In this document: positions 24,301 to 39,300 of the stretch, one piece after another
How the letters are laid out: every line of letters starts with the position of its first letter
Position numbering within the stretch: position 1 is the stretch's first letter
Source of the DNA: Stylophora pistillata
Lineage: Eukaryota
Reading direction: 5' to 3'
Assembly (NCBI RefSeq): GCF_002571385.2
Contig: NW_019217789.1
Span: forward strand, 656,916-720,915
DNA: 64,000 nt
The notes under the pieces: model-generated
Database searches by the model: none
Told to the model about the DNA's origin: nothing
The model's input: the letters and a program-made list of their open reading frames with translations, nothing else
Made by a program: the position numbers and the translations under genes

Positions 24301-27300
24301 AGGACATTAAACGCGAAACATGGCTTTAGTTTTCGAGTTTAGCTCGCAACAACCAATTAAAGAAGAGTGTCGAGACACGCCGACCGCTGAAGTTTGGAGT
24401 TATTTGCTGGAGTTATCATTAAGTTCACCAGTTTGGGGAGCGAGGAACATCTGAAATCTCACATAAAGCCAAGGTGCGCCGAAGGTAAGCTGTATTTATG
24501 ACGAAATCTCCTCCAGTTGTTCGATTTTAGTGTAGGTGAAAAAATCGCGAATGATGGTACATGTGCTGATTCAAACGGTCATAACTTTTGACAAATCGAA
24601 AACGTACAGGGGTTTTTGCATTTTTTTTGCCTGTAAAGGTCTAAAATTAACGGCTGTGTAGGATAGAGTTGTCAACCAGGTCCCAAATCCCAAAACTTAA
24701 CGTCTAAATCAAGGTTATTTACGGCCATCGGCCGATGGCGATTTATAGGGGTCAGAATATGCTAAAATTCATCTTTTCAGATATATTGAGAGAGCAAATT
24801 CTAACTTTCTTGGCAAACTAAAAAGGATTTTAAGCAATCTCATATAAATTCGGTGGCTTAACTATGCGAATCAAATATTTTACAATGTTACTAAATATGC
24901 CTATTTTTCAATTTTTGAGACGTTGCGACGGTCCCAACAGACTGGGAAACAATTATGGCCCCAAACGCAGTCAGAAAATTATTTCCAAACAAACCAAATC
25001 TAATTTAGTTCTTTCCTAAGTAAAGTCTTTCTGTTGACAGAGTTTCAGGCAAAATTATTTTTGACACGAAATTGACCGGGTGGAAATAATAGAGACAACC
25101 TCTTAATCATAATATTCTTTCACCAAATATTTTCAATAGAATAAATATAACTTGACAACAAAATACACTGTTGCACTACGATATATACATGTGTATATAT
25201 AGATAAGAAAGAAAAGTAGAGACCAAACGAAGTGGAAATGGCCGAACGTGACGAAACAAGTTCTTCATCAAGCTAGCTTGACCAAAATTTTCGCTAAAGG
25301 CAGTCCGCTGCATTTCGGTTTGCGAAATCGATACACTTCCTACTTTGCTTAAAAATATTTGTTATTCCGAAAGTCATTTAAGCAATAATAATTCCTTTGT
25401 CGATGCTAAAACTGTCTCAAACCCTGAGGGCTAAATTTTGGTGCCGGGTACCGGGTTCATCATTGTAAAATTCTTAGAATTTCAAGAGTTTCCGCTTTCA
25501 CCACCAGAAAAATATTTGGCAAGTGTAAAGCGCTTTTTTTTGGTTCGTCAAATAAGATTTACATTAACACAATGTAAAGTTTTATTTTTGACATCTGCTA
25601 AACCGAAAAGTACATTTTCATCGCGGTAGTGCGGCAAAGTCCGACTTTTCCCAAGCATTATTTCGATTCAGATTTATTGAACAAATGTAGAAAAGCTTGA
25701 AAATCCAAAAGCATGTTGTGGCTGAAGCGAACGTTGAACGCAGTTGGCCGATAAATCGTGTATTCCGCATCGATAGAACAGTTTGAAGCGTGCACTGGAC
25801 CCATAAGAATTATGTATCCATAACAACCCTTAAAGAAAGGCAATTTAACCAATAACCGCCTATCATAGTAGTGAGATCTGCACTTTTTGGTCCGTTTTCT
25901 GCATATAACAATTCAAAGTCATGATTTCATTAGAAATGAACCGGCTGGAGATCAAAAGGTTCAAAAGCTGTTAATTACGCTGCAGACTTAGGAGTTACGT
26001 GTAAAACACAGTGTGGGCTACTATTCGCATTTTCTTCTGTCGTAGTAGATATAAATAGAGATATTGCGTGGAACTTCCATGACAAAAATGTGCGACAAAA
26101 ATGTGCGACAAAAATGTGCAAAAAGAAACCCGTGAGTGTGTTTTTAGTGTAACTTGATGAGAGTTTTATCTTTAAAGGCTATTAACTCATTACCAGAAAA
26201 AGTGTTTCCAAAACTAGCCAGAGGTTATGACCAGTTTACAGTCTGAAAAATTTTTAATTTCCTCCACTAATCACTTTTTTTTGTTGTTGTTGTTGCTTTT
26301 GTTTTTTTATTTTATATTGTTTTCTTATCGGCCTGTTTGTTTTATAATGCCCTCCCGCGGCTGTCGCTCAGTCCTTTAACCTCGCCCCTTCGAAAAACGA
26401 AGCAGGGAGCCTTGTCCAGAAAGGTAGTTCTGAGAGTACTATGAAACGTAAAATTTTAACCCTGTAAATCCTCAATTCGCGTCTTATTATGTTAATTTCG
26501 GAGTATTTGTGATAAAAGGTGTTTAAAGTTTAGGTATATCATTTCACTATAGTACGCTGCTCTGTTCGAAGCTGACAGGTTTACGCTGTATTAAATACGA
26601 ACAAAAGTGATAGTAAATGAAAACCGAGTACCTCTCTTTGAATGCTCTGATGTTATTTTCTATGTCTGTTCTAAAATACTTATTAGTTATCGCTTCACTC
26701 TCCGTATTACCTNAAACTAGCCAGAGGTTATGACCAGTTTACAGTCTGAAAAATTTTTAATTTCCTTATCACAAAATCTCTTTGTAATATTGTTTAGTCT
26801 TATTGGACCTACATATGGTGGTTGTGTCCACTACACTATCCCTTTAAAGACATTGACAACATATCTACTAACTTTTCTGGTACATTTGCAGACTATATAG
26901 CAAATCATCTTTAAATACATATTATAGTAAAACTTTCCTTTTCCTTTGGACTGAGTTAGTGGATCTTTCTATAGGGACATATCTTCAAACGCAATAAGCC
27001 ATGTTCCAGAGGGATTATTCTTCAACCTGACCAGGCTGGAATATCTGTGCGTGAAATTTTGACTCACCTTACTATATGATTTTTGTCAGCATGTGCAGCG
27101 GTCCTTCCCTCTATTTTTAGCCTAAAAAAGAGCATAGCAAGACTGGCGCAAAGGCATTAGACGAAGAGAAAAAAAACTGTTAAGACCAATGGAAGGGGTA
27201 GGGAAGACAAAAAAAAAAAAAGAAAAGAAAGCTTACTGACGAGTTCAGAGGTTTTTCTCAGGACGTCTTCTATCGAGTCTCGTCAAACGTCACGTGAGAA

Positions 27301-30300
27301 ACAATCATTACCTCCTTCCGCACCTCAGCGAAACAAACGTCGACGCTTTTGTGTGGAGCAAATTTCAATCCCTTCTAAGGCGAGTCCGATTTTATTTGAC
27401 AGTCGACCCGTTTGCATCAGTGGCTTTGATTGATTGAAATTCCCTCATAGACTAGACGGATTCTCGCTCTCAGAAGTTCGTGCGAAACAATCCCGTCAGG
27501 CCTTTCTTTTCCTTCGATGCTCCTTCCTTCCACTAATCACTTTTTTTTGTTGTTGTTGTTGCTTTTGTTTTTTTATTTTATATTGTTTTCTTATCGGCCT
27601 GTTTGTTTTATAATGCCCTCCCGCGGCTGTCGCTCAGTCCTTTAACCTCGCCCCTTCGAAAAACGAAGCAGGGAGCCTTGTCCAGAAAGGTAGTTCTGAG
27701 AGTACTATGAAACGTAAAATTTTAACCCTGTAAATCCTCAATTCGCGTCTTATTATGTTAATTTCGGAGTATTTGTAATAAAAGGTGTTTAAAGTTTAGG
27801 TATATCATTTCACTATAGTACGCTGCTCTGTTCGAAGCTGACAGGTTTACGCTGTATTAAATACGAACAAAAGTGATAGTAAATGAAAACCGAGTACCTC
27901 TCTTTGAATGCTCTGATGTTATTTTCTATGTCTGTTCTAAAATACTTATTAGTTATCGCTTCACTCTCCGTATTACCTTATTTATTTGTTTTTTCCATAG
28001 GGATTTATCTTCAAACGCCATGGGCTCTCTTCCAGGAAGAGCGTTTGTCAAGCTGGAAAGATTACGTTTCCTGTAGGTGAAATTTGACTTGTCCTTTAAA
28101 ATGTTCCGTGTTAGCGAACAGCAATCTTTTCCTTCTTCTTTAAGTTCTTTTAAAAGGGAAAGAGGCATGGTCTAAGCGGAACTCGTACGAAGACATAAGA
28201 AGAAAGGGAAAGGGAGGAAAACGGAAGCTTCCTTCTGAATCCAAAGATTTCAGCGAACGTTCCTAAATGCTTTCACTGATTAAGGCAGCGCCTGTCATGT
28301 CAAGTATTCACTTGAGAGACAAAAGAGAGATTAAACACGGCGTTTACGTTAAACGGCAAACGTCAGCTTGCCCTTTCACGTTTCTAGTAAAATAGCGTGA
28401 GCCTTGCTTCAGCTTCGCGCGAGGTCACGTCACGGTTGATTTGAAGGCGACCCTGTATGACTTACAATATGATTTGCAAGGAATAGTTTTGGGGCCCTTT
28501 TTCCGGCAATAAACTTTTACTCTGGAAAAGAAAATGTGAAAATCTTACGTATAAGGCAAATGCGAAACAGATCCCTTTCATGAAGAAACGGCAAAGCGCA
28601 ACCGGCCAACGTGAAAAAATGGAGGGAAAAAACAAGGTCACGTGGTTACTCTTGCCGTTCACGTTTCTCATAAATGCGGTCATATATCACTCTTTTCCCC
28701 CCTTCCGACAAAGGGTGAACTCCCAAGCAAATATCGTGGCGACAATTTCACCACCCAAGAAATTAATTTCTTATCGGTATGGCAAATCAGAACAGTTAGA
28801 GTTGCGTCCCAAATTTCTGTGTCGAGACAATTTGTAATTTGGGTATTTCCCATGCAATTTGAAACGAAGGAATTCTAATCAAACCTCAGAAAAGGAAAAA
28901 ATCCTCAAGTAAACCCTTTGGAGAGTGGAAACGGCAGACCTACTGGTGTTAAGGCCAAACATGCGAATTCTTGAAGATTGCCTCTGCATTAAATAAATAC
29001 AAATCATTTCTAATGTCTGATGATGGCAAGTCAGTGGATAAGAAATTAAGAACCTTTGTTTAGAGAAAATTTATATATCATATTTTCTCAATTTAAAGCC
29101 CCCGAAGTTTAATTGAGGTGACAGTAGACCTTCGTGGGTGTTCTTCGCAAAAAAAAAAAATTAAGGCGTTATTTGAAGCATAGCCACCATAAACTACATA
29201 TCAATGAAAAGGTTCTGAAATGCACTGTTCGGGAAAAAAATATTTCTTGTCTTGATCTAATCATAAGTGAGCATGCAATACCCTTTTTTTTTTTGGAAAG
29301 CATAACTTCTTCCACAAGAATTCCAATATTATGGAAAAAATTGCTAATCTAATGTACGACATCAATACTACTTCTGCACCAAGTAATATTTCGAATTTGT
29401 TTTCGAAAATTTCCAGCGTTCACTCTTACGGCACACGTTCATCAACGCCTGAGCATTTTTAGACCAAACATTCTGCGCTTAATGTTCAAAGTAAGGCTTT
29501 TTCACGTGTTGGCGTTAGAATCTGGAATGGGAGACCAACTAGTCTTAAAAAACTTTTCACAGAACTCTTTTAAAAAATCCATTAGAACAAAATTAATCGA
29601 AATTCTATAAACTGAAAACTCCTATGTTGAAATAGATACTCTAATTAATAAGATGAAAGTTAACTTCTAATTATGTTTAGTCTGTAGTCGACTCCTAATT
29701 CAAAACAGATACTTTAATTAATACTTGATGAAAGGTTAATTTCTAACTGTAGTTATGTTTGGTATCTAGTCTCTTTAGTCTGTAGTTTTCCTCTTTCCTC
29801 TGTCATGTTGCAATATTATTATGTGAAATTGTCTAATATTACTTTTCAATCGTCTGGCTTGCCGCGACTAGCTCTTCGCTATTCGCAAGCCAGCCTAGTA
29901 ATAACCACCTGATATTTACTTGAAAATAAAATCTCTCTCTCTCTCGCTCTCTAATCATAAACTGAATGGGGCGTGTTTTCAACTTAAAAGCGACCTAAGC
30001 ACGCCTCAGCAAAATTTAACGTTTGCTGATCGAGTGCGAGCAGCGAAGATTGCCTAAGCAAACAACGAACCTTTGAGATTCTTTCGCCATTCCGCCTCGA
30101 GTTTCTTTACCTTTTGTGTGACAGCAAGGCTTCTTGGACTCTTCCTCTATTTTACACTCATATTCATTCTCAAGTTTTAAACGCAGAGTGTTTTGCAGCT
30201 AGAAACGTTAACTGTACGGGAGTCAAGTTATAATTGACTTCCATATTTTGGCGAGCTAGCGATTCATTTCGAAAATATATTTCTGGAAATAACTCGCGTG

Positions 30301-33300
30301 CGTCTCAATATTTTAACAAAAATTTTCCTTGGAAACCATAGATAAAATAATAATGCTTAGTTTGACATGGAAAAAAAATCAAGAAAATTGGCCATCAAAG
30401 GTTTACCGTATCCTTAAAATCGACAGCTTTTAACTGGCGTTTTTTCGAGAAGATATGGTATCTTATTGTCTCCGATTTCATCTCTAAGTTGACACTAAAT
30501 TGTTGATAGGTGAAACATATGGAGAGATTTGTCATCAGGCCAAATACCAGAAATATAATTTGGCTATACTTGATAAAAGATTAACCAATTGCAATTCCTC
30601 ATTACATCCGGCTCGTGAACGAAAGTCTCATTCCTTAAATAAGCCAAATTTTAGGCAACTTTAGGTTCTGTTAGGTTCGGTTTTTTACCACTAAGATTGA
30701 CCATGAACAAGTTAATGATGTCCAGAATGTTTGTCTAGAATGCACCAAGCCTACTGACTCTTTTGCTTGCTTATAAATAAATATCATAACCTTATATCCA
30801 CAAATTAATGTCTAAATAGTCCGCAAAGTCAGGGTCAAGAACATTTATAAATTAGCGGTTAAAAAGCTTTTAAAACTACACGACGTCAACGCTTTTAAAC
30901 TCAAGTGACAACCATGAGTCGGGCAGAGAATAGGCCCGTAGTGCGCATAATAATAAGCATGTAACGTGTAAATGGCAGCTTCAAAATCATTGTAGTAGTG
31001 TTTACTATTGGCAACAGATATGCCTTAGAGTTTTCAAATGCTTAGATTTCTCTTACATTTATTTTCTTAAGCTACATTTACTTTGAAAATTGAGTACATT
31101 TCAAATGGTTACAAGGTGGAATATTCTGTCCTATCACGAAATAAGCATCATTACAAAGCTTTCCTTTTCCTCGTCTTAGTTAATCGCTTTTCCTGCAGGT
31201 ATTTGTCCTCAAACACTATAGGCTCTCTTCCGAAAGGAGTGTTTGACAAGCTGACCTCACTGGAACACCTGTACGTAGAATTTGAGATAGGTAAAACACC
31301 ACCGAAATTGACTATGGTTTTTCGGGTTGATGGGAAACATTTGTTTAAAATTTTACGAACTTAGAAATGGTAAATGGAGTAAAAATTAGCAGACATGAAT
31401 AAAATAAGAAGTTTAATCTTTCCAACTAATATAGTACTTTAAAAAAGAGATTCATCCTCAGAGGCTATTGTAACTATACCAGAGACCGTCCGTATCCAAA
31501 TTAAAATGCTTTTCATTATCTGTGCGCGCTGTGAAAGACTTCACTTTTGTCCATTGAAATTTTCTCCTCGCGTCACTTCAGACAGTTTTGTCGATTCTAT
31601 CATAGAATCCCCATTACATTTTCTCGTGGCTTCAATATTTGATTCTACCATAGGGATCTATCTTCCAACGAAATAAGCTCTCTTCCAGGAGGAGTATTTG
31701 CCAAGCTGACCTTTCTGTGGTTCCTGTACGTAAAATTTGACATACCTCAGTTTATCCTTCAAAATTTTCTGTTTTAACATAAAGAATTGTTGGTTCCAGT
31801 AGTAGTTTCTTTTGCTGTCGTTGTACTTGTCTTTGCAATCGTAATCCGGATGAATCCAAACAGCCTGATCATATCAAATTGCACGTACTACTAGCATTAC
31901 ACAAATTGCGTTATTCAACAGCAATACAAAAGTATAGAGGAGAATTTTTTTCTTCAAAGTTGAGAGATTTTAACTTGCTACTGTAACGAAGCAGTAGGGA
32001 GAAAAGAGAGAGAAAAGATAAGTGGCTTCTAGTTCTTGCTCTAACATTTCCGTTGTCAAAATTGTGTCACTTACGCAGCGATCCATTTGATGCAAAATTG
32101 CCTGACAGCGAGTAACGACTACTCTGTCATTTCCTTTCAGTTCCTAACGACTCCGGAATACATTTATCTTACAGTAGACCAGTTATTTTCACTGTCAAGC
32201 CGATATAAATACTGCCGGCGAACATTGTTTCGAGAGGAGTTCGGAGAATTTTCATGTTTTTTTTTTTTTTTTGCTTCTTTAGCTCTTATATAAGTTTATC
32301 TTCAGCAATTAATTCTAGGACATCTTTGCGAGTCTTCTGGACAAAATATTGAAAATCTTGTGCCCTAGTTTTAACGCAATTACTTCCCGCTTTATATTGA
32401 AAAGAATCTATTTCGCAAAAAATTGTACAGAGCGGTACACTTTGTACTTTCAATTGACTGGTTCACAGAATTCTTTTATTTTCTTCTACGCTAAAAAATA
32501 GCTAGTTATGGAGAGGAGGAAGAGACATGATGCACCTTTTTTCCATGTTTTGTTCCAGTTCTTAAAGGTTTAAAATAATTACTCTCAGGAATGTATTGAG
32601 TCTACCTTTTTCCCTGAGACGATCAATTTTCTACGCAGCAATCGAAGCTGCCACAGCTATTTTTTAACTGAGGCTCTGTTTTAGATTCCTTAGTGGGAAC
32701 AATCTAACGCGTATTCCTTCTCGTGCCTTCTTTTATATGTATCAATGGAGAATTATGTAAGTACACACGAAGAAACTGCTCTTTAAATAATTGACTGCGA
32801 GAGACTGGCGTAATCACCTATGTCTAATGTCTATCGATTCCTTCGAACTTGCTACAGAGTATTCGCAACGATGAAAAACTGCAGCTTCTTTTTTCAAGAT
32901 AGTAGTTAATTGCCAATTCCCAAAGGAAGCATTTTCCATTTTATGCCAGTGGAATAACATTTTATTAACAGATTCAACTTCGTGAGGATGGTGGTAACGA
33001 CGGTAACAAGGACGTTACTTGCCATGACGACGGTTGACGATAACTACTATAATAACGGTACAACAACGAAGACGGTGGTGGCGTTATTTTCTACAAGGAA
33101 CACAATGACGACGGCAATGATTATGATAACGACGATGACGATGATGTAAACATCAACAACTAAGATATTTTGTCTTTTTATCTCTTACCTGTAGATCACT
33201 ATCCGATAATCCTTTGGTAACAATTGACTCGGAGGCATTTCATTTCCGCACATCTGTAACCAGTAGATTGTAAGTAATCTTATTTGTTATTAAAATTTGT

Positions 33301-36300
33301 TTTACTGCTCCCCGAGTGGAAGAAAGAAACCTATGTCATAAATGTTAAACCTCGATAGCTCAACTAAGGGCCTACACTGGCTGAAAATCCTTAAAATCTT
33401 GTGTTTACCTCCAATAATTAGACTGCTTTAGAATCTACAAATTAGGATGGCGATTTGGGGTAATGGTACGGCTGGTATTTCAAAACCAATGGTCCCTTAT
33501 TCTTGTTCTTTTATAGAGATAAACTATTCTTCAGTCTTCTGACAGGCCACTCTTTTCTAAGCCTTATCTGACAGCGGCTCTGTTGCGAAATCTCAGGTTT
33601 AAAAAGATCATTCGCTTTGATAAATTGTACACACCATTCTTATATGACCAAATATGGTATTCTTTGTTTCCGTACCTGATAGCGACGCCATCCCAACGAG
33701 TGCCTTTAACAAACTCTGCTTTTTCATTGTATTGTCATAGATTTCTTCTGCGAACAAACTTAAAATTATTCAACTCTGACTCATTAACGAACTTCGACGC
33801 TGGCGATTTCAAGCTGTAAAGTATCCGACGAGTGTTTAACGAAATTTTATCATTGTTATCTGTATAAATCATTATGCGAACAATTCAACATAATATTTCA
33901 TAAATATAAGTAAATCCAGAGAATCCTACGTGCCCAGGTGGAGAAGGAACAAGAGAAATCCTATAATAGAATGCACAGTAATGCTCCGTCAGAATGATTT
34001 ATCTTTCCCACGCCAGACACGTGCTTACGAGTGAACTTCTCACTTCGACGGGTTTGATACAAACCCTAATAACCAGCTCCCAGTTGTCGTGTTAGTATCG
34101 CAGAGGTCATGGATTCAAATCCCGTACGGACCTGAATTTTTTTCAAGCTTTATTTCCACTACTACATAAGTAAGGTCCTTTACTGCGAGGATCGCTCTCA
34201 TACGAAGGTATTTTATGAGTAAGCCCCATCGATTATTGTAATCCCAGTATATCTTTAGTTGCACTTCTGTTTCAGAAACTTATGGGAAAGAATTCCTCGC
34301 ATCATAAATTACTACCATAACAACAAGACCACGCTGGAAGTACATATGTAAGTACGATGTTTTATATATGAACTTCATATATTCATTGTATCTCATTTAC
34401 GATGTTTTGTATGTTTGGGAAAAGGATGCTAACAAGCATCTGTCACAAAATCAATCTGTTCGATATAATCAAAAGCATAAATTCAGACAAATGAGATGAG
34501 TTTTGTTCGAGGGTTTCTTTAGTTTACCTTGAGAGACACAACCTATACTTTTGTAATTTAAAATGAAAAGCTACGTGAGATACGAAGCAAAAATGTTCTT
34601 GGAGTATCCTTAAAAATGCATTGTTTCTCCCAACAATTACTCACAATGCAAAGTCAAAAGCCTTTCGATCAAAACCCTTGTGTCAGTTTGAATGGTTGAT
34701 AAACTTTTCTCTGTCAGTGTGGATAATACCTACATGTAAATTTAGCCAAGCCTAAAAGTTAGTAAAATTTTTCTTCTCTTTACCCAATTGGAACTTTCCC
34801 TGGCTGAACAACAACCTTCATAACAATTAATTTACAGTAATTTAGAGACTGGTCAACGTGGTACTTGTAACAAAATAGTATCTTCCACGTGAACTTTGGT
34901 GCTCAATTTTATCCTTAGAAATCCTATAGATCCACACAGAGAAGTTTTTAGAGTCCCCGCTATGGAGGACTTGACTCTTTCGGATGCTTTGCTAAGCATG
35001 GGTTTCACAAGAACTTACGATCACCCTTACGGTATATATCGACCGTGTCAATTGGGAACGTTTTCAAACGGAAATGGAAAGTGTACAGAATGTCCTCCTG
35101 GTACGTTATGTTGTGATTTAGTTTACTACCTTCAGAAGAAGTAGATCCGTTTTAAAACGACTTAGAAAGGCCAAATTCCATCTGTAGAAGGCGATGCTCG
35201 TATAGCTGAAAAAAACTTGTTATCATTATCAAAGCACCATGATAATCAAGGAGAATTTTGAGATATAACTCACATAATTAGAGAAAAGACAGAAGTGCCC
35301 GATTATGTCACTAACAGTTCAAGTCTTCATAATGATATATTGTTTGTTCCTTTATTGGGTCTTTTTTTTTTATTTGAAACTTGAAACGATCTTTGCTCGT
35401 TTAAAAAGAAGTCACTGAAGTCCTCTTTTAATTCTACCTCGCTTTCTCTTGGCTTTCCATGGCTAACAAGTTATGTGAACTTTTACCAGGCGGTTTCTAC
35501 TCTGATACTCTTGCTTACGTTGCGGAAAGCTGTAAGGAATGTCCGAATGGATCCTACGTCCCCTACGACAAAAAACCAGGAAGATCAATTCTAGAATGCG
35601 TGGCGTGCCCCCTGGGTAATAATTGTAATTACCCATGATTGTTTACCATCTCAGCACCTACTGTTTGTCAAAATTTTTAAGTGGATGAGTCGAATGGCTA
35701 AAAAAAATTCAAATGTAAATAAATATGATCGTTGATAAGAAAAGGTTGCAAATGGGAAAGTAATTTTCCATAGATAAACATCGGCGGAAGGGTAACAATG
35801 TTGTCATTTTCAACAAGACCTTCAATTCACGCATTATGAAAAGAGAAAGTGAAGGGTATTGAGGTGAAACTTTTAAATATTCCAAAACATCCCTTTACAT
35901 TCTTCCCTTGATCTGCAAGTAAAAACAATACCGTCGTTGTGCATGCATCACCGGTTTTACAAGTTTACAGACAGATTTTAAGAATAATGGCTGTCGTAAC
36001 TAAAACTATAAATATTGGATATGCCTCATACCCTCATTGAGGTATGAATATATTTGAAACTATGGTAAAAAAGAAATACAATCATCGTTGCTTTTTTTTT
36101 TTTTCAGTTCGAACTAAGAGAAGAACGAAACATAAAGAATGCTTTTCGTTTAATAGCGTCACAACTTACCTATAAGCATGCGTACAACACTGTTTGAAGT
36201 CAAAACCTTACCTCGATAACACTCACAATTTTCTAAATTTTAACAGGAACTGAAAGTGACTTTTTAGCTGGATATCGTGCCTGTCCGTGTTTGGAAGGAT

Positions 36301-39300
36301 TTTATCGAAGCCATCGATTCGCTGAATGTCTCAAATGCAAAGTGGGAATGGTGTGCCAAGATGACTATGCCTCATTAAAATCTGGATTTTGGTGGCAGTG
36401 GCGTAACGAGTCATACAAACATCGCTACCAGCAGTTCGTACATAATCTTTTGGTAGCTTCTCCAGCGCTGGATAGCTCCTCCATTCAATATCCGCATGCT
36501 ATCCCAACAGCTTATAGGTGCCAGGTAGAGAAATCTTGCAAAGGTGGCTTGGAATCACCATGTGGAAAAGGGTATCAAGGACCACTTTGCGCAGTTTGTA
36601 GTTCAGGATATCACAAACAACTGGAGTCCTGTGAAAAATGTCCGTCAAAGGCGTGGATTGCGGTACAGTTGTCCATTGTCGTACTCATTCTATGTCTACT
36701 ACTGACATTTTTGATATTGAAGAGAAAATCAAAATTTGAAAAAGACGAAGGCCACTATCTGATGGACGTGTTTTTTTCCAAAATCAAAATACTGGTTGGT
36801 TTTTATCAGGTCACGCACGGCTTGCTAGAAGTCTTCTCGTACATTCAATGGCCAGATTCTTTGCAAGGTGTCGCCACATACTCCGGAATACTCCAGTTAA
36901 ATATGCTTCAGATCGCACCCATCCACTGCCTTTTTCCAGGGTTACACCTAAATACCTTTGGAGAATTGCTCCTGATGTTAACTTTGAATTTGACGGTCAT
37001 TAGCGTCTCTGGTATATGTCTCCTAATCTATAAGATAGTAATCTCGAAGAGTCATAACCTTGACGAAGACGAAAAGTCGACCAAAATCAACCAAACAAAA
37101 CAGCTCGTTTACAAAAATTTGTTTTTCTTCCTGTACGTAACATACCTGAGTACACTTTCCAAGACAGCCAGCGTTCTCCCATTTGCATGCCGGAAATTAT
37201 GCAGAGATGAAAAGGAGGAGATGTGTGAAGAATACGTTAAAGCAGATTACAGCATTCAGTGTCAAGGATCCTTATATAACCATTGGCTGATCTTGGCATA
37301 CATTTCGACCGCATACGTTTTTGCCTTGCCTGCCGCTTCGTTTATCGTACTTTGGAGGCAACGGAGAGTGTTATCATCTTCGACAAGGAATAGGGACTCT
37401 GGCACGGAGGTCATCGAGGGTTTGAGATTCCTTTTTGAAAATTACAAATCCACTCTCTGGTACTGGGAACTAGTTGAAATGTCTCGTAAAGCTGTTCTTA
37501 CTTCTGGCCTTATCCTTGTAGGACAAGAGAGCAGGTCTTATATTGGTTTGGCATGGGTGGTTGCTGGTATTTATGGAGTGCTCTTCTCCTGGATGAAACC
37601 CGTACAAGTCACTTCCGAAAACAGACTGATGTCCACGTCCCTCGCTGTCACCATTGTTAACTTGGGCGTTGGCGCTGTGAGCAGAATCCCCGCAGAAAAT
37701 ATTTCACATGAGGTGGACAAACAAAAAGACGAACTTATGATGAAAATACTTATCCTTGGAGCAAATGCTATGGTGATTTGTCTACTTGTCGGTAAGGCTG
37801 GATTAAAGGTACTCCGTATTTTTAACAGTTGATCGGCACGTCATCGCAAGTTGACTCTTTCTCCATCATATAGGGGAAAAATTTCAATTAACAGGATTCA
37901 CGTCGTCTTAAATTTTGAGCGAACGTTAGTTACGCCTAAAAGATAGCCAAAAGTGGATCCGATCTCATTATGGCTTAAGCCTTTAAACGGTGTAGAAAAA
38001 TCCCAGCAGTGGATGCCGTTAAGGCCTTACTATGTTGGCCCAGCGATGAGATGAAAGCAGTGATAGCTTTAAGTAGCGGACTGAATGACTACATTGCATT
38101 GCGTGGCTAGTGCAAATAACATCCGATTATTAACAATGGAGCGAAACGAGTGAGGCAAAGAAAATGTACTGTCGTCATAGGAGCGGAAATATTAGAAGAC
38201 ATATTATTACGTATATTTTTGGCAACAACTGTTTGGCAACCTTCGACGAAAATAACCATTTGGGGATTTTAGGTTCAAAACAGAGCTGTCACCGTCAAAT
38301 ACAATATTCTCTTTTTTGCTGATTTGTTTCTGTTACTTTGATTATACTCAACTTTCCGCTTCTGTAAATCAAAACGTGAATGATCTCTGTGTTTAGAATC
38401 AGTTAACGTTTGGAACGTATTGACCGTTTTAGCTCATGATGTAATTAGTGTTTCTATATTCCCTTTTAAGGGCTTCTTAGGATTCCCTGACATGATAGAA
38501 AATATGATTTAAATTGACTTCCTATATGACGTTTCTCTGCAGCCAATAGCGTCGGTTGAAAGACAAGCTCCTCAAGGCTCACTTTAAGTTAGGTTTGCTA
38601 TATGCAGCATGATATCCTGAATTCGTGGCTTTGATAAAAAATTTACATTTGATTGAACTATTCCAATTTTATCTCTGCCACAGGTCAGTATTTGATGTCT
38701 TTATATGAGGATTTAAAGGAGTGGCGCAAAAACCCACAATGTTCCTTTTCCTGTTGCCTGGCTTTGCTTCTTCCTCTTAACGACTTGCAAGGAGAAATTC
38801 GAGGAATGGTTGGCCAAGACCTCATGAAAACTCAACTTGACTCAGGGATGTTGGAGAAACCGAACGTTACTGCTTCTGCGCAAGATAGTGGTGCTATGAG
38901 CTTTGCTATTTGTGGCGAAGAGTTTGAACGCGAAAATGAAGTCAAAACGGAATTTCGCTACCGAGAGGACGACGTCAGAGAGAACAACAAAAAATATAAT
39001 TGTTGGACACAAACAAAAGTTGCAATGCCACCATTTGCTTCCATCGTGGGATCGGAATCGACGAAAGGGCAGCAGAGGATACATAAGTGAGTGTGAAAAT
39101 TATCTAGACTAAATGATTTTAATGTAACGCAGGAAACCTCGCAAGTGGCATATTTTAACCACCTAAGCTACCATAGCCGAACCTCTATTTAACATTCCTA
39201 CACCAAATCTCTTATTGCTGGCATACTATCTGGCACACGCTATATTGCACAAATACTGGGCGTTTGGTTCACTGTTATTATGATACATAAGCCGCGCTTT

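What the first reader, a model, noticed from the sequence alone, without database searches (positions are those of the whole stretch)
26211..27978. Assembly join appears to capture two haplotypes that differ by one whole LRR exon
Seen: before N26713 the sequence runs ...AATTTCC (26262) straight into TCCACTAATC. After the N, the same left flank (26714-26765) is followed by 763 extra bp (26766-27528) containing LRR exon 26975-27046, and then the same TCCACTAATC block. The two copies differ by one SNP (G26511/A27777), and the junction has TTCC(T) microhomology. Inference: a heterozygous 763-bp deletion removing one LRR in frame, i.e. 7- and 8-LRR alleles in one individual.
Basis: partly seen in the sequence, partly recalled or inferred. 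Interest (0 to 1): 0.75.

Follow-up and report, generated by a model that had tools for sequence, protein, structure and literature searches.

The report
Unmerged haplotypes differing by one LRR exon
At one scaffold join in a stony-coral genome the same stretch was assembled twice, once with and once without a 763-base piece that carries one leucine-rich-repeat exon; both versions are real and occur together in public samples, so this is an ordinary structural polymorphism shown up by a known kind of assembly error.

Summary
26211-26712 is a 52-nt flank plus a 450-nt block. After the single N at 26713 come the same flank, 763 extra nt (26766-27528), then the same block with one mismatch.

Logan contigs of 3 of 3 DNA runs laid (three samples, two studies) form a k=31 bubble at these breakpoints. 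One contig ends at 26263. An 822-letter branch spans 26737-27558 at 0.40-0.67 of flank depth. The next contig starts at 27529. Contigs run unbroken across 26210|26211 and 27978|27979, so the apparent tandem duplicate is false.

The 763 nt are single-copy in the 397.6-Mb assembly. They hold a well-formed 72-nt, phase-symmetric LRR exon (26975-27046), so the short form lacks 24 codons in frame.

The gene is an uncharacterised coral CUB / Ig-like / LRR / cysteine-rich / multi-pass membrane protein. The genome is Stylophora pistillata or a very near relative.

- **Not shown:** the deletion-junction contig itself, a 1:1 ratio, any RNA use of the exon, and allelism as opposed to a collapsed two-copy locus.

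The parts
26162..26233 (+). Upstream LRR-like cassette exon. It is 72 nt and degenerate: Lys replaces the conserved Asn, and both splice sites are weak. Its last 23 nt lie inside the duplicated left flank.
   Evidence: No Pfam hit.
26211..26262 (+). Left flank, first copy. This is near the end of the contig that precedes the N.
   Evidence: Identical to 26714-26765.
26263..26712 (+). Right block, first copy, joined directly to the left flank. This is the short (deletion) form, and it ends at the N.
   Evidence: In 3 of 3 DNA runs a contig ends exactly at 26263 (table 8).
26713..26713 (.). Single-N scaffold join between two contigs that overlap instead of abutting. I did not fill it.
26714..26765 (+). 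Left flank, second copy. This is the start of the contig that follows the N.
26766..27528 (+). 763-nt segment present only in the long form. It is 40% G+C and single-copy in the assembly.
   Evidence: An 822-letter contig covers 26737-27558 at 0.40-0.67 of flank depth in 3 of 3 DNA runs.
26975..27046 (+). LRR cassette exon of 72 nt. It starts with one base that completes a codon and ends with two bases of the next. It encodes (L)DISSNAISHVPEGLFFNLTRLEY(L).
   Evidence: Pfam LRR_8 E 0.0035, 17.5 bits, below the 27-bit cut-off.
27529..27978 (+). Right block, second copy.
   Evidence: In 3 of 3 DNA runs the next contig starts exactly at 27529 and runs unbroken across 27978|27979 (table 8; start worked out from record offsets).
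26511..26511 (+). G in the short form, against A at 27777 in the long form. This is the only substitution between the two copies.
   Evidence: At 27777 X2 reads A, while X1 and X7 read G (table 3).
28001..28072 (+). Next LRR cassette exon downstream, 72 nt. In the short form it would be the next exon after 26162-26233.
   Evidence: Pfam LRR_8 E 0.0092.
21280..33269 (+). The LRR exon series of the gene: 21280-21351, 26162-26233, 26975-27046, 28001-28072, 31199-31270, 31654-31725, 32685-32756 and 33195-33269. That makes 8 visible exons in the long form.

Best explanation
The scaffold holds a false duplicate made from two haplotypes. The real locus exists in two forms. The long form has the 763 nt 26766-27528, including LRR exon 26975-27046. 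The short form joins 26262/26263 directly to 27529.

The contig left of the N was extended along the short form, and the contig right of the N was extended back along the long form. Because the two differ by 763 nt they could not be merged, so they were left overlapping with one N between them.

The long form is the older one and the short form is a deletion: the segment has no donor copy elsewhere in the assembly, and its exon is an old, diverged member of the gene's LRR exon series. The breakpoints lie in T-rich intron sequence with 1 nt of strict microhomology, which points to end-joining or replication slippage and not to unequal crossing-over between repeat units.

At the protein level the short form would lack exactly one 24-residue LRR of an uncharacterised coral CUB / Ig-like / LRR / cysteine-rich / multi-pass membrane protein.

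- **Shown:** the layout, the coexistence of both forms in each sample laid, the absence of a real tandem duplicate, and the exon's frame.
- **Inferred:** allelism, the direction of the change, the assembler's route to the error, and any effect on the protein.
For: - **Layout:**
- **Bubble in 3 of 3 DNA runs laid** (X2 from 2016; X1 and X7 from 2024; three samples, two studies; 4 of the 24 listed runs were laid), table 8. The left contig ends at 26263, which is the record's end. An 822-letter contig lies at 26737-27533, with 25 more letters running into a skipped repeat, so it reaches 27558. The right contig starts at 27529 by record offsets. All overlaps are 30 letters. This is exactly the k=31 branch expected if a second path joins 26263 to 26264.
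- **Depth:** branch against flanks is 18.5 vs 27.7/32.6, 88.9 vs 138.5/153.5 and 77 vs 180.7/191.2.
- **No outer fork:** contigs pass 26210|26211 and 27978|27979 unbroken.
- **Possible junction contig:** bin 26150-26349 holds more depth than the listed contig explains. A short unlisted junction contig would account for it.
- **Single copy:** the 763 nt match nothing else in the 397.6-Mb assembly. The only other matches are 40-94 nt at 73-93%.
- **More than one genotype:** site 31187 shows three letters among the assembly, X2 and X1/X7, so at least two genotypes carry both forms (table 3).
- **Assembler:** the S. pistillata assembly used ALLPATHS-LG with HAPLOIDIFY, then SSPACE and three rounds of GapFiller (PMC5730576, passages). 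GapFiller extends from both gap edges and closes a gap only if the extensions overlap and the size fits the estimate within 50 nt (PMC3446322, passages).
- **Exon:** frame and splice sites. Five of the eight cassette exons give weak LRR_8 matches.
Against: - The roughly 59-letter contig expected over the deletion junction was not among the records listed (801 not shown). No joint or loose end at the junction was listed either. So outside the assembly the junction is inferred from the shape of the graph and not read directly.
- Depth ratios (0.57-0.67, 0.58-0.64, 0.40-0.43) are only roughly one half.
- All 3 of 3 samples carry both forms, which a fixed two-copy locus would also give.
- In X7, depth falls to 92-116 over 30028-31745, and I cannot explain this.
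- Logan contigs are simplified graphs. They give no read pairs and no long-range phase.
- RNA run X20 (about 2 in 100 of the run read) put 0 reads on any of the four exons laid, so use of the exon is untested.
- The paper speaks of 'nubbins' from 'colonies', so a single genotype for the assembly is not stated.
Confidence: 0.8

Rival explanations
1. Both forms are real but are not two alleles of one locus in one diploid genotype. Either every haploid genome holds two near-identical copies of the region, one with and one without the 763 nt, collapsed into one locus by all short-read assemblies; or the samples are mixtures or chimeric colonies.
For: 3 of 3 samples laid, plus the assembly, carry both forms. 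For unrelated heterozygotes the chance of this is at most 0.125 for three. Ratios are not exactly one half. In X7 the flanks (181-191) have twice the depth of 30028-31745 (92-116).
Against: - In X1 and X2 the flank depth equals that of neighbouring single-copy contigs out to 31745 (138-169 and 23-40).
- The assembly has no second locus.
- The two copies differ by only 1 substitution in 502 nt.
- In X1 the long branch is the deeper one, yet the contig reads G at 27777, which is the letter of the short form in the assembly. The substitution is therefore not fixed between the two forms, as it might be between two loci.
- Clonal aquarium stock would also explain the 3 of 3.
Confidence: 0.13
2. The short form is only an assembly error: a chimeric or wrongly extended contig end. 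No molecule joins 26262 to 26263.
For: The junction sits next to a T-rich low-complexity run (26268-26330) where assemblers and the laying tool have trouble. No junction contig was listed.
Against: Three independently assembled runs break their contigs at exactly 26263 and 27529, with 30-letter overlaps to an 822-letter branch of reduced depth. This needs a second path at both ends. A de Bruijn collapse would need about 30 shared letters, and the breakpoints share 1. The left-flank word occurs nowhere else in the assembly.
Confidence: 0.05
3. The scaffold is right: a real tandem duplication lies on one chromosome, with a short copy followed by a long copy.
For: Only the scaffold as written. 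A real tandem duplicate of an LRR exon unit does exist in the upstream paralog.
Against: The copies end and begin exactly at the N. In 3 of 3 runs contigs cross 26210|26211 and 27978|27979 without a fork. The right block has the same depth as its neighbours and not double. The real duplicate in the paralog is 91.6% alike and has no N, unlike this one at 99.8%.
Confidence: 0.02

Closest known systems
False heterotype duplication in genome assemblies (Ko et al. 2022, Genome Biol 23:205, PMC9516828; abstract and passages seen)
   Same: Two haplotypes of one region are placed side by side on a scaffold, with a gap between the copies. There is haplotype-specific sequence at about haploid depth, and it arises where the haplotypes differ too much to merge.
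   Different: This one is very small: 502 nt duplicated, where that paper surveyed duplicated regions and genes genome-wide. The cause is a single 763-nt indel and not high local divergence. No false gene results, only a false repeat of 23 nt of exon plus intron. Read-pair discordance could not be tested.
Allelic duplications left in coral assemblies because of high heterozygosity (Noel et al. 2023, Genome Biol 24:123, PMC10236652; passages seen)
   Same: A coral genome in which heterozygosity leaves both alleles in the haploid assembly and confuses counts of duplicates.
   Different: That paper deals with whole allelic contigs and duplicated BUSCO genes in long-read assemblies. Here the overlap lies inside one scaffold of a short-read assembly, and it happens to expose an exon-level variant.
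Gain and loss of single-LRR cassette exons within this gene cluster; from recall and not tested here, variation in LRR number in plant resistance genes and one-LRR-per-exon genes such as LGR-type receptors
   Same: One 24-residue LRR per 72-nt phase-symmetric exon, so whole repeats can be added or removed in frame. Neighbouring paralogs carry about 14 and about 7 such exons, and one shows a real tandem duplicate of an exon unit.
   Different: Here the change is a still-segregating deletion with non-homologous breakpoints: 29 nt after one exon and 482 nt after the next. Unequal crossing-over would break at matching positions of two repeat units.

Membership tests
False heterotype duplication (features as listed in PMC9516828) | Gap between the duplicated pair on the same scaffold | tested here: met
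   The single N at 26713 lies exactly between the copies. The first copy ends at 26712 and the second starts at 26714.
False heterotype duplication (features as listed in PMC9516828) | Haplotype-specific sequence or words between the copies | tested here: met
   A 763-nt indel and 1 substitution. The 822-letter branch contig is separate from its flanks in 3 of 3 DNA runs.
False heterotype duplication (features as listed in PMC9516828) | About half read depth on the haplotype-specific part | tested here: inconclusive
   The branch has 0.57-0.67 (X2), 0.58-0.64 (X1) and 0.40-0.43 (X7) of flank depth. These are mean word depths of contigs and not raw read depth.
False heterotype duplication (features as listed in PMC9516828) | Discordant read pairs or linked reads across the copies | not testable with these tools
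   All DNA runs were held as contigs only.
False heterotype duplication (features as listed in PMC9516828) | No sequence support for the outer junctions of the duplicate (my own added criterion) | tested here: met
   Contigs cross 26210|26211 and 27978|27979 unbroken in 3 of 3 runs. Nothing was laid on 26350-26736 apart from the start of the branch (tables 2 and 8).
Heterozygous germline deletion allele | Both forms present in one sample | tested here: met
   The bubble is present in each of X2, X1 and X7. The short path is inferred from the forks and was not listed itself.
Heterozygous germline deletion allele | Single locus, 1:1 ratio and Mendelian segregation | tested here: inconclusive
   One locus in the assembly. 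The ratio is only roughly one half. Segregation cannot be tested here.
Leucine-rich repeat (Pfam LRR_8 type) coding exon | LxxLxLxxNxL core followed by xxLPxxxFxxLxxL | tested here: met
   Read directly from the translation (L)DISSNAISHVPEGLFFNLTRLEY(L). The consensus wording is recalled.
Leucine-rich repeat (Pfam LRR_8 type) coding exon | Significant match to the family profile | tested here: inconclusive
   E 0.0035, 17.5 bits against a cut-off of 27. A single 23-residue repeat cannot reach the cut-off.
Leucine-rich repeat (Pfam LRR_8 type) coding exon | Spliced into mRNA | tested here: inconclusive
   RNA run X20 gave 0 reads on bins 26950-27149, 27950-28149, 31150-31349 and 31550-31745. 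All 41 reads laid lie on intronic repeats, and about 2 in 100 of the run was read.
Real tandem duplication | Duplicated block at double depth, with a fork at its outer edge | tested here: not met
   The right block has depth 32.6 / 153.5 / 191.2 against left flank 27.7 / 138.5 / 180.7. There is no fork at 27978|27979.

The most novel reading that the evidence does not exclude
The presence or absence of this one LRR cassette is an intermediate-frequency, perhaps balanced, polymorphism in Stylophora pistillata. It is heterozygous in every sample looked at (3 of 3 runs plus the reference, at least two genotypes). Colonies would then routinely make two versions of a receptor-like surface protein with 7 and 8 repeats, from a gene family whose members differ mainly in how many single-LRR exons they carry.
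Probability: 0.1. Interest if true: 0.55.

Novelty: new member of a known kind. Interest (0 to 1): 0.3.

Why it matters
**For users of the assembly.** This scaffold of the widely used coral reference carries a false 502-nt repeat inside a gene, including 23 nt of an exon. That can disturb gene models, read mapping and variant calls here. The join should be collapsed to one haplotype.

**For biology.** It is a clean, easily genotyped example of an in-frame exon presence/absence variant in a receptor-like gene from a large coral-specific family. It shows the same process still segregating that has made neighbouring paralogs differ in LRR number. A two-band PCR would serve as a simple marker for telling apart clonal and non-clonal colonies.

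Neither point opens a long-standing question.

Tried and rejected
- **Tandem duplication.** Rejected on contig continuity and depth.
- **Transposon insertion as the source of the 763 nt.** Rejected. The segment has no other copy in the assembly and carries a member of the gene's own exon series.
- **Unequal crossing-over between LRR units.** Rejected. The breakpoints lie 29 nt and 482 nt after their exons, so they are not at matching positions. The breakpoint neighbourhoods are only mildly alike: local score 13, reached by 16 of 2000 shuffles and 21 of 2000 random window pairs.
- **A systematic artefact at every single-N join.** Rejected. Only 1 of 18 isolated single-N joins, and 1 of 32 N runs examined in 324 kb, shows the overlap. 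One other join had a 20-mer match 3.8 kb upstream, across another gap. I did not follow it.
- **Direct view of the junction elsewhere.** A scan of JGI metagenome contigs for a 26-base word of the shared left flank found 0 matches.
- **LRR counts among homologs.** Counting LRR motifs in the 120 proteins listed gave nothing useful: 118 of 120 had none, because the length filter keeps out long family members.
- **Earlier notes.** Word searches of the scan's earlier notes gave nothing on this kind of join.
- **Whole-protein search.** Each exon was scanned on its own, so this gene had no whole-protein search, and I did not see its public gene model.
- **Supplementary files.** None were opened. Tables S1 and others of PMC5730576 may give assembly details that I did not see.


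Full report
**What is in the sequence.**
- 26211-26262 is identical to 26714-26765.
- 26263-26712 matches 27529-27978 at 449 of 450 positions, with G26511 against A27777.
- The second copy has 763 extra nt (26766-27528) between flank and block.
- The first copy ends at the base before the single N at 26713, and the second copy begins at the base after it.

So two contigs overlap by 502 nt (first) or 1265 nt (second) instead of abutting. Of the 7 N runs in the window, only this one behaves so. I looked at 324 kb of the same contig and examined 32 of its 45 N runs, leaving out 13 tiny runs in one patch. 18 of the 32 are isolated single Ns. Only this join has flanks that match at 95% or more. It is therefore not a habit of every join in this assembly.

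**The junction.** The two forms share 1 base (T) at the breakpoint. The 61-nt neighbourhoods of the two breakpoints are mildly alike. Their local score is 13, reached by 16 of 2000 shuffles and by 21 of 2000 random window pairs from the same introns. The left breakpoint lies 29 nt after exon 26162-26233, and the right one lies 482 nt after exon 26975-27046. These are not matching positions of two repeat units, so unequal crossing-over is unlikely. End-joining or replication slippage in T-rich intron sequence is the likelier cause (inference).

**Evidence from public runs.** The look-up of sequencing runs listed 24 runs. 19 hold part of the stretch and 7 hold half or more of its words. All DNA runs are kept as Logan contigs. 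I laid 4 of the 24 on 25750-31745: X2 (2016, sample S2), X1 and X7 (2024, samples S1 and S3, one study), and the RNA run X20 as raw reads.

In 3 of 3 DNA runs the picture is the same.
- A contig of 1201-1291 letters ends, at its own last letter, on 26263. This is the last base shared by both forms.
- An 822-letter contig lies on 26737-27533 and has 25 more letters that run into a skipped low-complexity stretch, so it reaches 27558.
- By the record offsets, the next contig begins at 27529.
- The overlaps are 30 letters on both sides.

For words of 31 letters, 26737-27558 is exactly the set of words that contain anything specific to the long form. The graph can break at both of these places only if a second path leaves after 26263 and re-enters at 27529. 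That second path is the short form as written in the scaffold. The branch has less depth than its flanks: 18.5 against 27.7 and 32.6 in X2, 88.9 against 138.5 and 153.5 in X1, and 77 against 180.7 and 191.2 in X7.

**What one search does not show.** The contig of about 59 letters expected over the deletion junction is not among the 24 records listed (801 were not shown). No joint or loose end at the junction is listed. Bin 26150-26349 does hold more depth than the listed contig explains, by about 460, 2420 and 2280 depth-letters in X2, X1 and X7. This fits such a contig but does not prove it. Read laying allows one call, so I could not look again.

**A real tandem duplicate is excluded.** In 3 of 3 runs the contigs cross 26210|26211 and 27978|27979 without a break. 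The right block has the depth of its neighbours and not double. Nothing was laid on 26350-26736 except the first letters of the branch (tables 2 and 8).

**One locus or two; one genotype or several.** The 763 nt occur once in the 397.6-Mb assembly. The only other matches are 40-94 nt long at 73-93%. In X1 and X2 the flanks have the same depth as single-copy contigs out to 31745, which argues for one locus.

Two things argue the other way. All three samples carry both forms. In X7, depth falls to 92-116 over 30028-31745, which I cannot explain.

The samples are not all one genotype. Site 31187 reads C in the assembly, A in X2 and G in X1 and X7, and X7 has a run of private differences at 28702-29158 (table 3). 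Logan's bubble popping can mimic some such differences, so I claim only two or more genotypes.

In X1 the long branch is the deeper one, yet 27777 reads G, which is the short form's letter in the assembly. The substitution is therefore not tied to the indel, and this fits alleles better than two fixed loci. I put allelic heterozygosity well ahead, with about 0.13 left for a collapsed two-copy locus or mixed samples.

**How the assembly came to this.** A protein that NCBI names as Stylophora pistillata LOC111323230 is encoded at 100% identity over residues 155-672 on another contig of this genome. The genome size is close to the 400.1 Mb of scaffolds reported for that species (PMC5730576, passages). 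That assembly used ALLPATHS-LG with HAPLOIDIFY, an RNA scaffolder, SSPACE and three rounds of GapFiller. DNA came from 'nubbins' of aquarium colonies that originated in the Gulf of Aqaba.

GapFiller extends both gap edges base by base. It closes a gap only if the extensions overlap and the filled length is within 50 nt of the estimate (PMC3446322, passages). An extension along the short form from the left and along the long form from the right would fail that test and keep growing past each other.

The outcome fits what Ko et al. call a false heterotype duplication: a gap between the copies, haplotype-specific words and about haploid depth (PMC9516828, passages). Noel et al. report leftover allelic duplications in coral assemblies (PMC10236652, passages).

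**The exon and the gene.** 26975-27046 is 72 nt, preceded by tttctatag and followed by gtgcgt. It starts with one base that completes a codon, ends with two bases of the next, and reads (L)DISSNAISHVPEGLFFNLTRLEY(L). Its loss removes 24 codons in frame.

Eight such exons are visible: 21280, 26162, 26975, 28001, 31199, 31654, 32685 and 33195, the last being 75 nt. Scanned one by one, 4 give LRR_8 at E 0.002-0.017, 1 gives E 0.16 and 3 give nothing. None can reach the cut-off alone. Exon 26162-26233 is degenerate and has weak splice sites. The N runs at 21404-22114 and 23770 may hide further exons, so '8 and 7' counts only what can be seen.

On the same strand lie:
- two CUB domains (E about 1e-7 to 1e-8);
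- two Ig-like exons (Ig_2 E 5e-4 for one, none for the other);
- two cysteine-rich ephrin-receptor-like or TNFR-like exons;
- a 531-residue multi-pass membrane exon at 36237-37829 with only a weak DUF7630 match.

That membrane exon has 823 relatives at E 1e-5 or better among the 8000 candidates scored. All the names that sources give are coral proteins, called 'uncharacterized', 'hypothetical' or 'cysteine repeat modular protein A-like'. There are 63 matching places in this genome.

RNA run X20 gave 41 reads, all on intronic repeats and none on the four exons laid, with about 2 in 100 of the run read. Whether the gene or this exon is expressed remains untested.

**Which form is older.** The segment has no donor copy. 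Its exon is only about 70% like its neighbours and 77% like its best match in the upstream paralog. It is an old member of the series, so the short form is a deletion. Neighbouring paralogs carry about 14 and about 7 LRR exons. One of them has a real tandem duplicate of an exon unit, 91.6% alike over 274 nt with no N between. Gain and loss of single-LRR exons is therefore the normal way this cluster changes.

**Verdict.** The apparent duplicate is an assembly error of a known kind. The underlying 763-nt variant is real and removes one LRR exon in frame. It is a tidy case and useful for curating this reference, but it is not surprising. The one mildly odd point is that every sample examined carries both forms.

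Noticed in passing
window 13766-15966 (+): Pieces of a reverse-transcriptase ORF lie in the intron between the first CUB exons and the first Ig-like exon. Pfam RVT_1 gives E 4.6e-9 and 7.3e-5, and the pieces contain an FADD motif. This looks like a non-LTR retroelement.
   Followed up: partly
window 28150-28750 and 29150-29950: Intronic stretches show word depths up to about 52,000 in the DNA runs. They are also the only places where RNA reads of X20 lay. They look like dispersed, transcribed repeats.
   Followed up: no
upstream of the window, window coordinates -9164..-7872 (G000:C6 about 647752-649044; L010): The neighbouring paralog has about 14 LRR cassette exons. These include a real tandem duplicate of one exon unit (274 nt, 91.6% alike, no N between), with inverted repeats of 200-234 nt in between.
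   Followed up: partly
window 30028-31745: In run X7 only, contig depth is 92-116 here against 164-191 over 25750-29199. X1 and X2 stay flat. Either this stretch is hemizygous or the left part has an extra copy in that sample. I have no explanation.
   Followed up: no
window 905-4645 versus 33728-37685: Two tandem paralogs lie about 33 kb apart, 73-85% alike at the DNA level over the cysteine-rich and membrane exons. A third paralog's LRR exons lie 39-46 kb upstream of the window. The family gives 63 matching places in the genome.
   Followed up: partly
downstream of the window, window coordinates 69642-69710 (G000:C6 726557-726625; L015): A patch of 13 tiny N runs of 1-10 letters sits within 70 nt. 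It is unlike the other gaps.
   Followed up: no
downstream of the window, window coordinate 202007 (L028): At this single-N join, the first 20 letters after the N also occur 3.8 kb upstream, beyond another gap. The blastn check did not reach that far.
   Followed up: no
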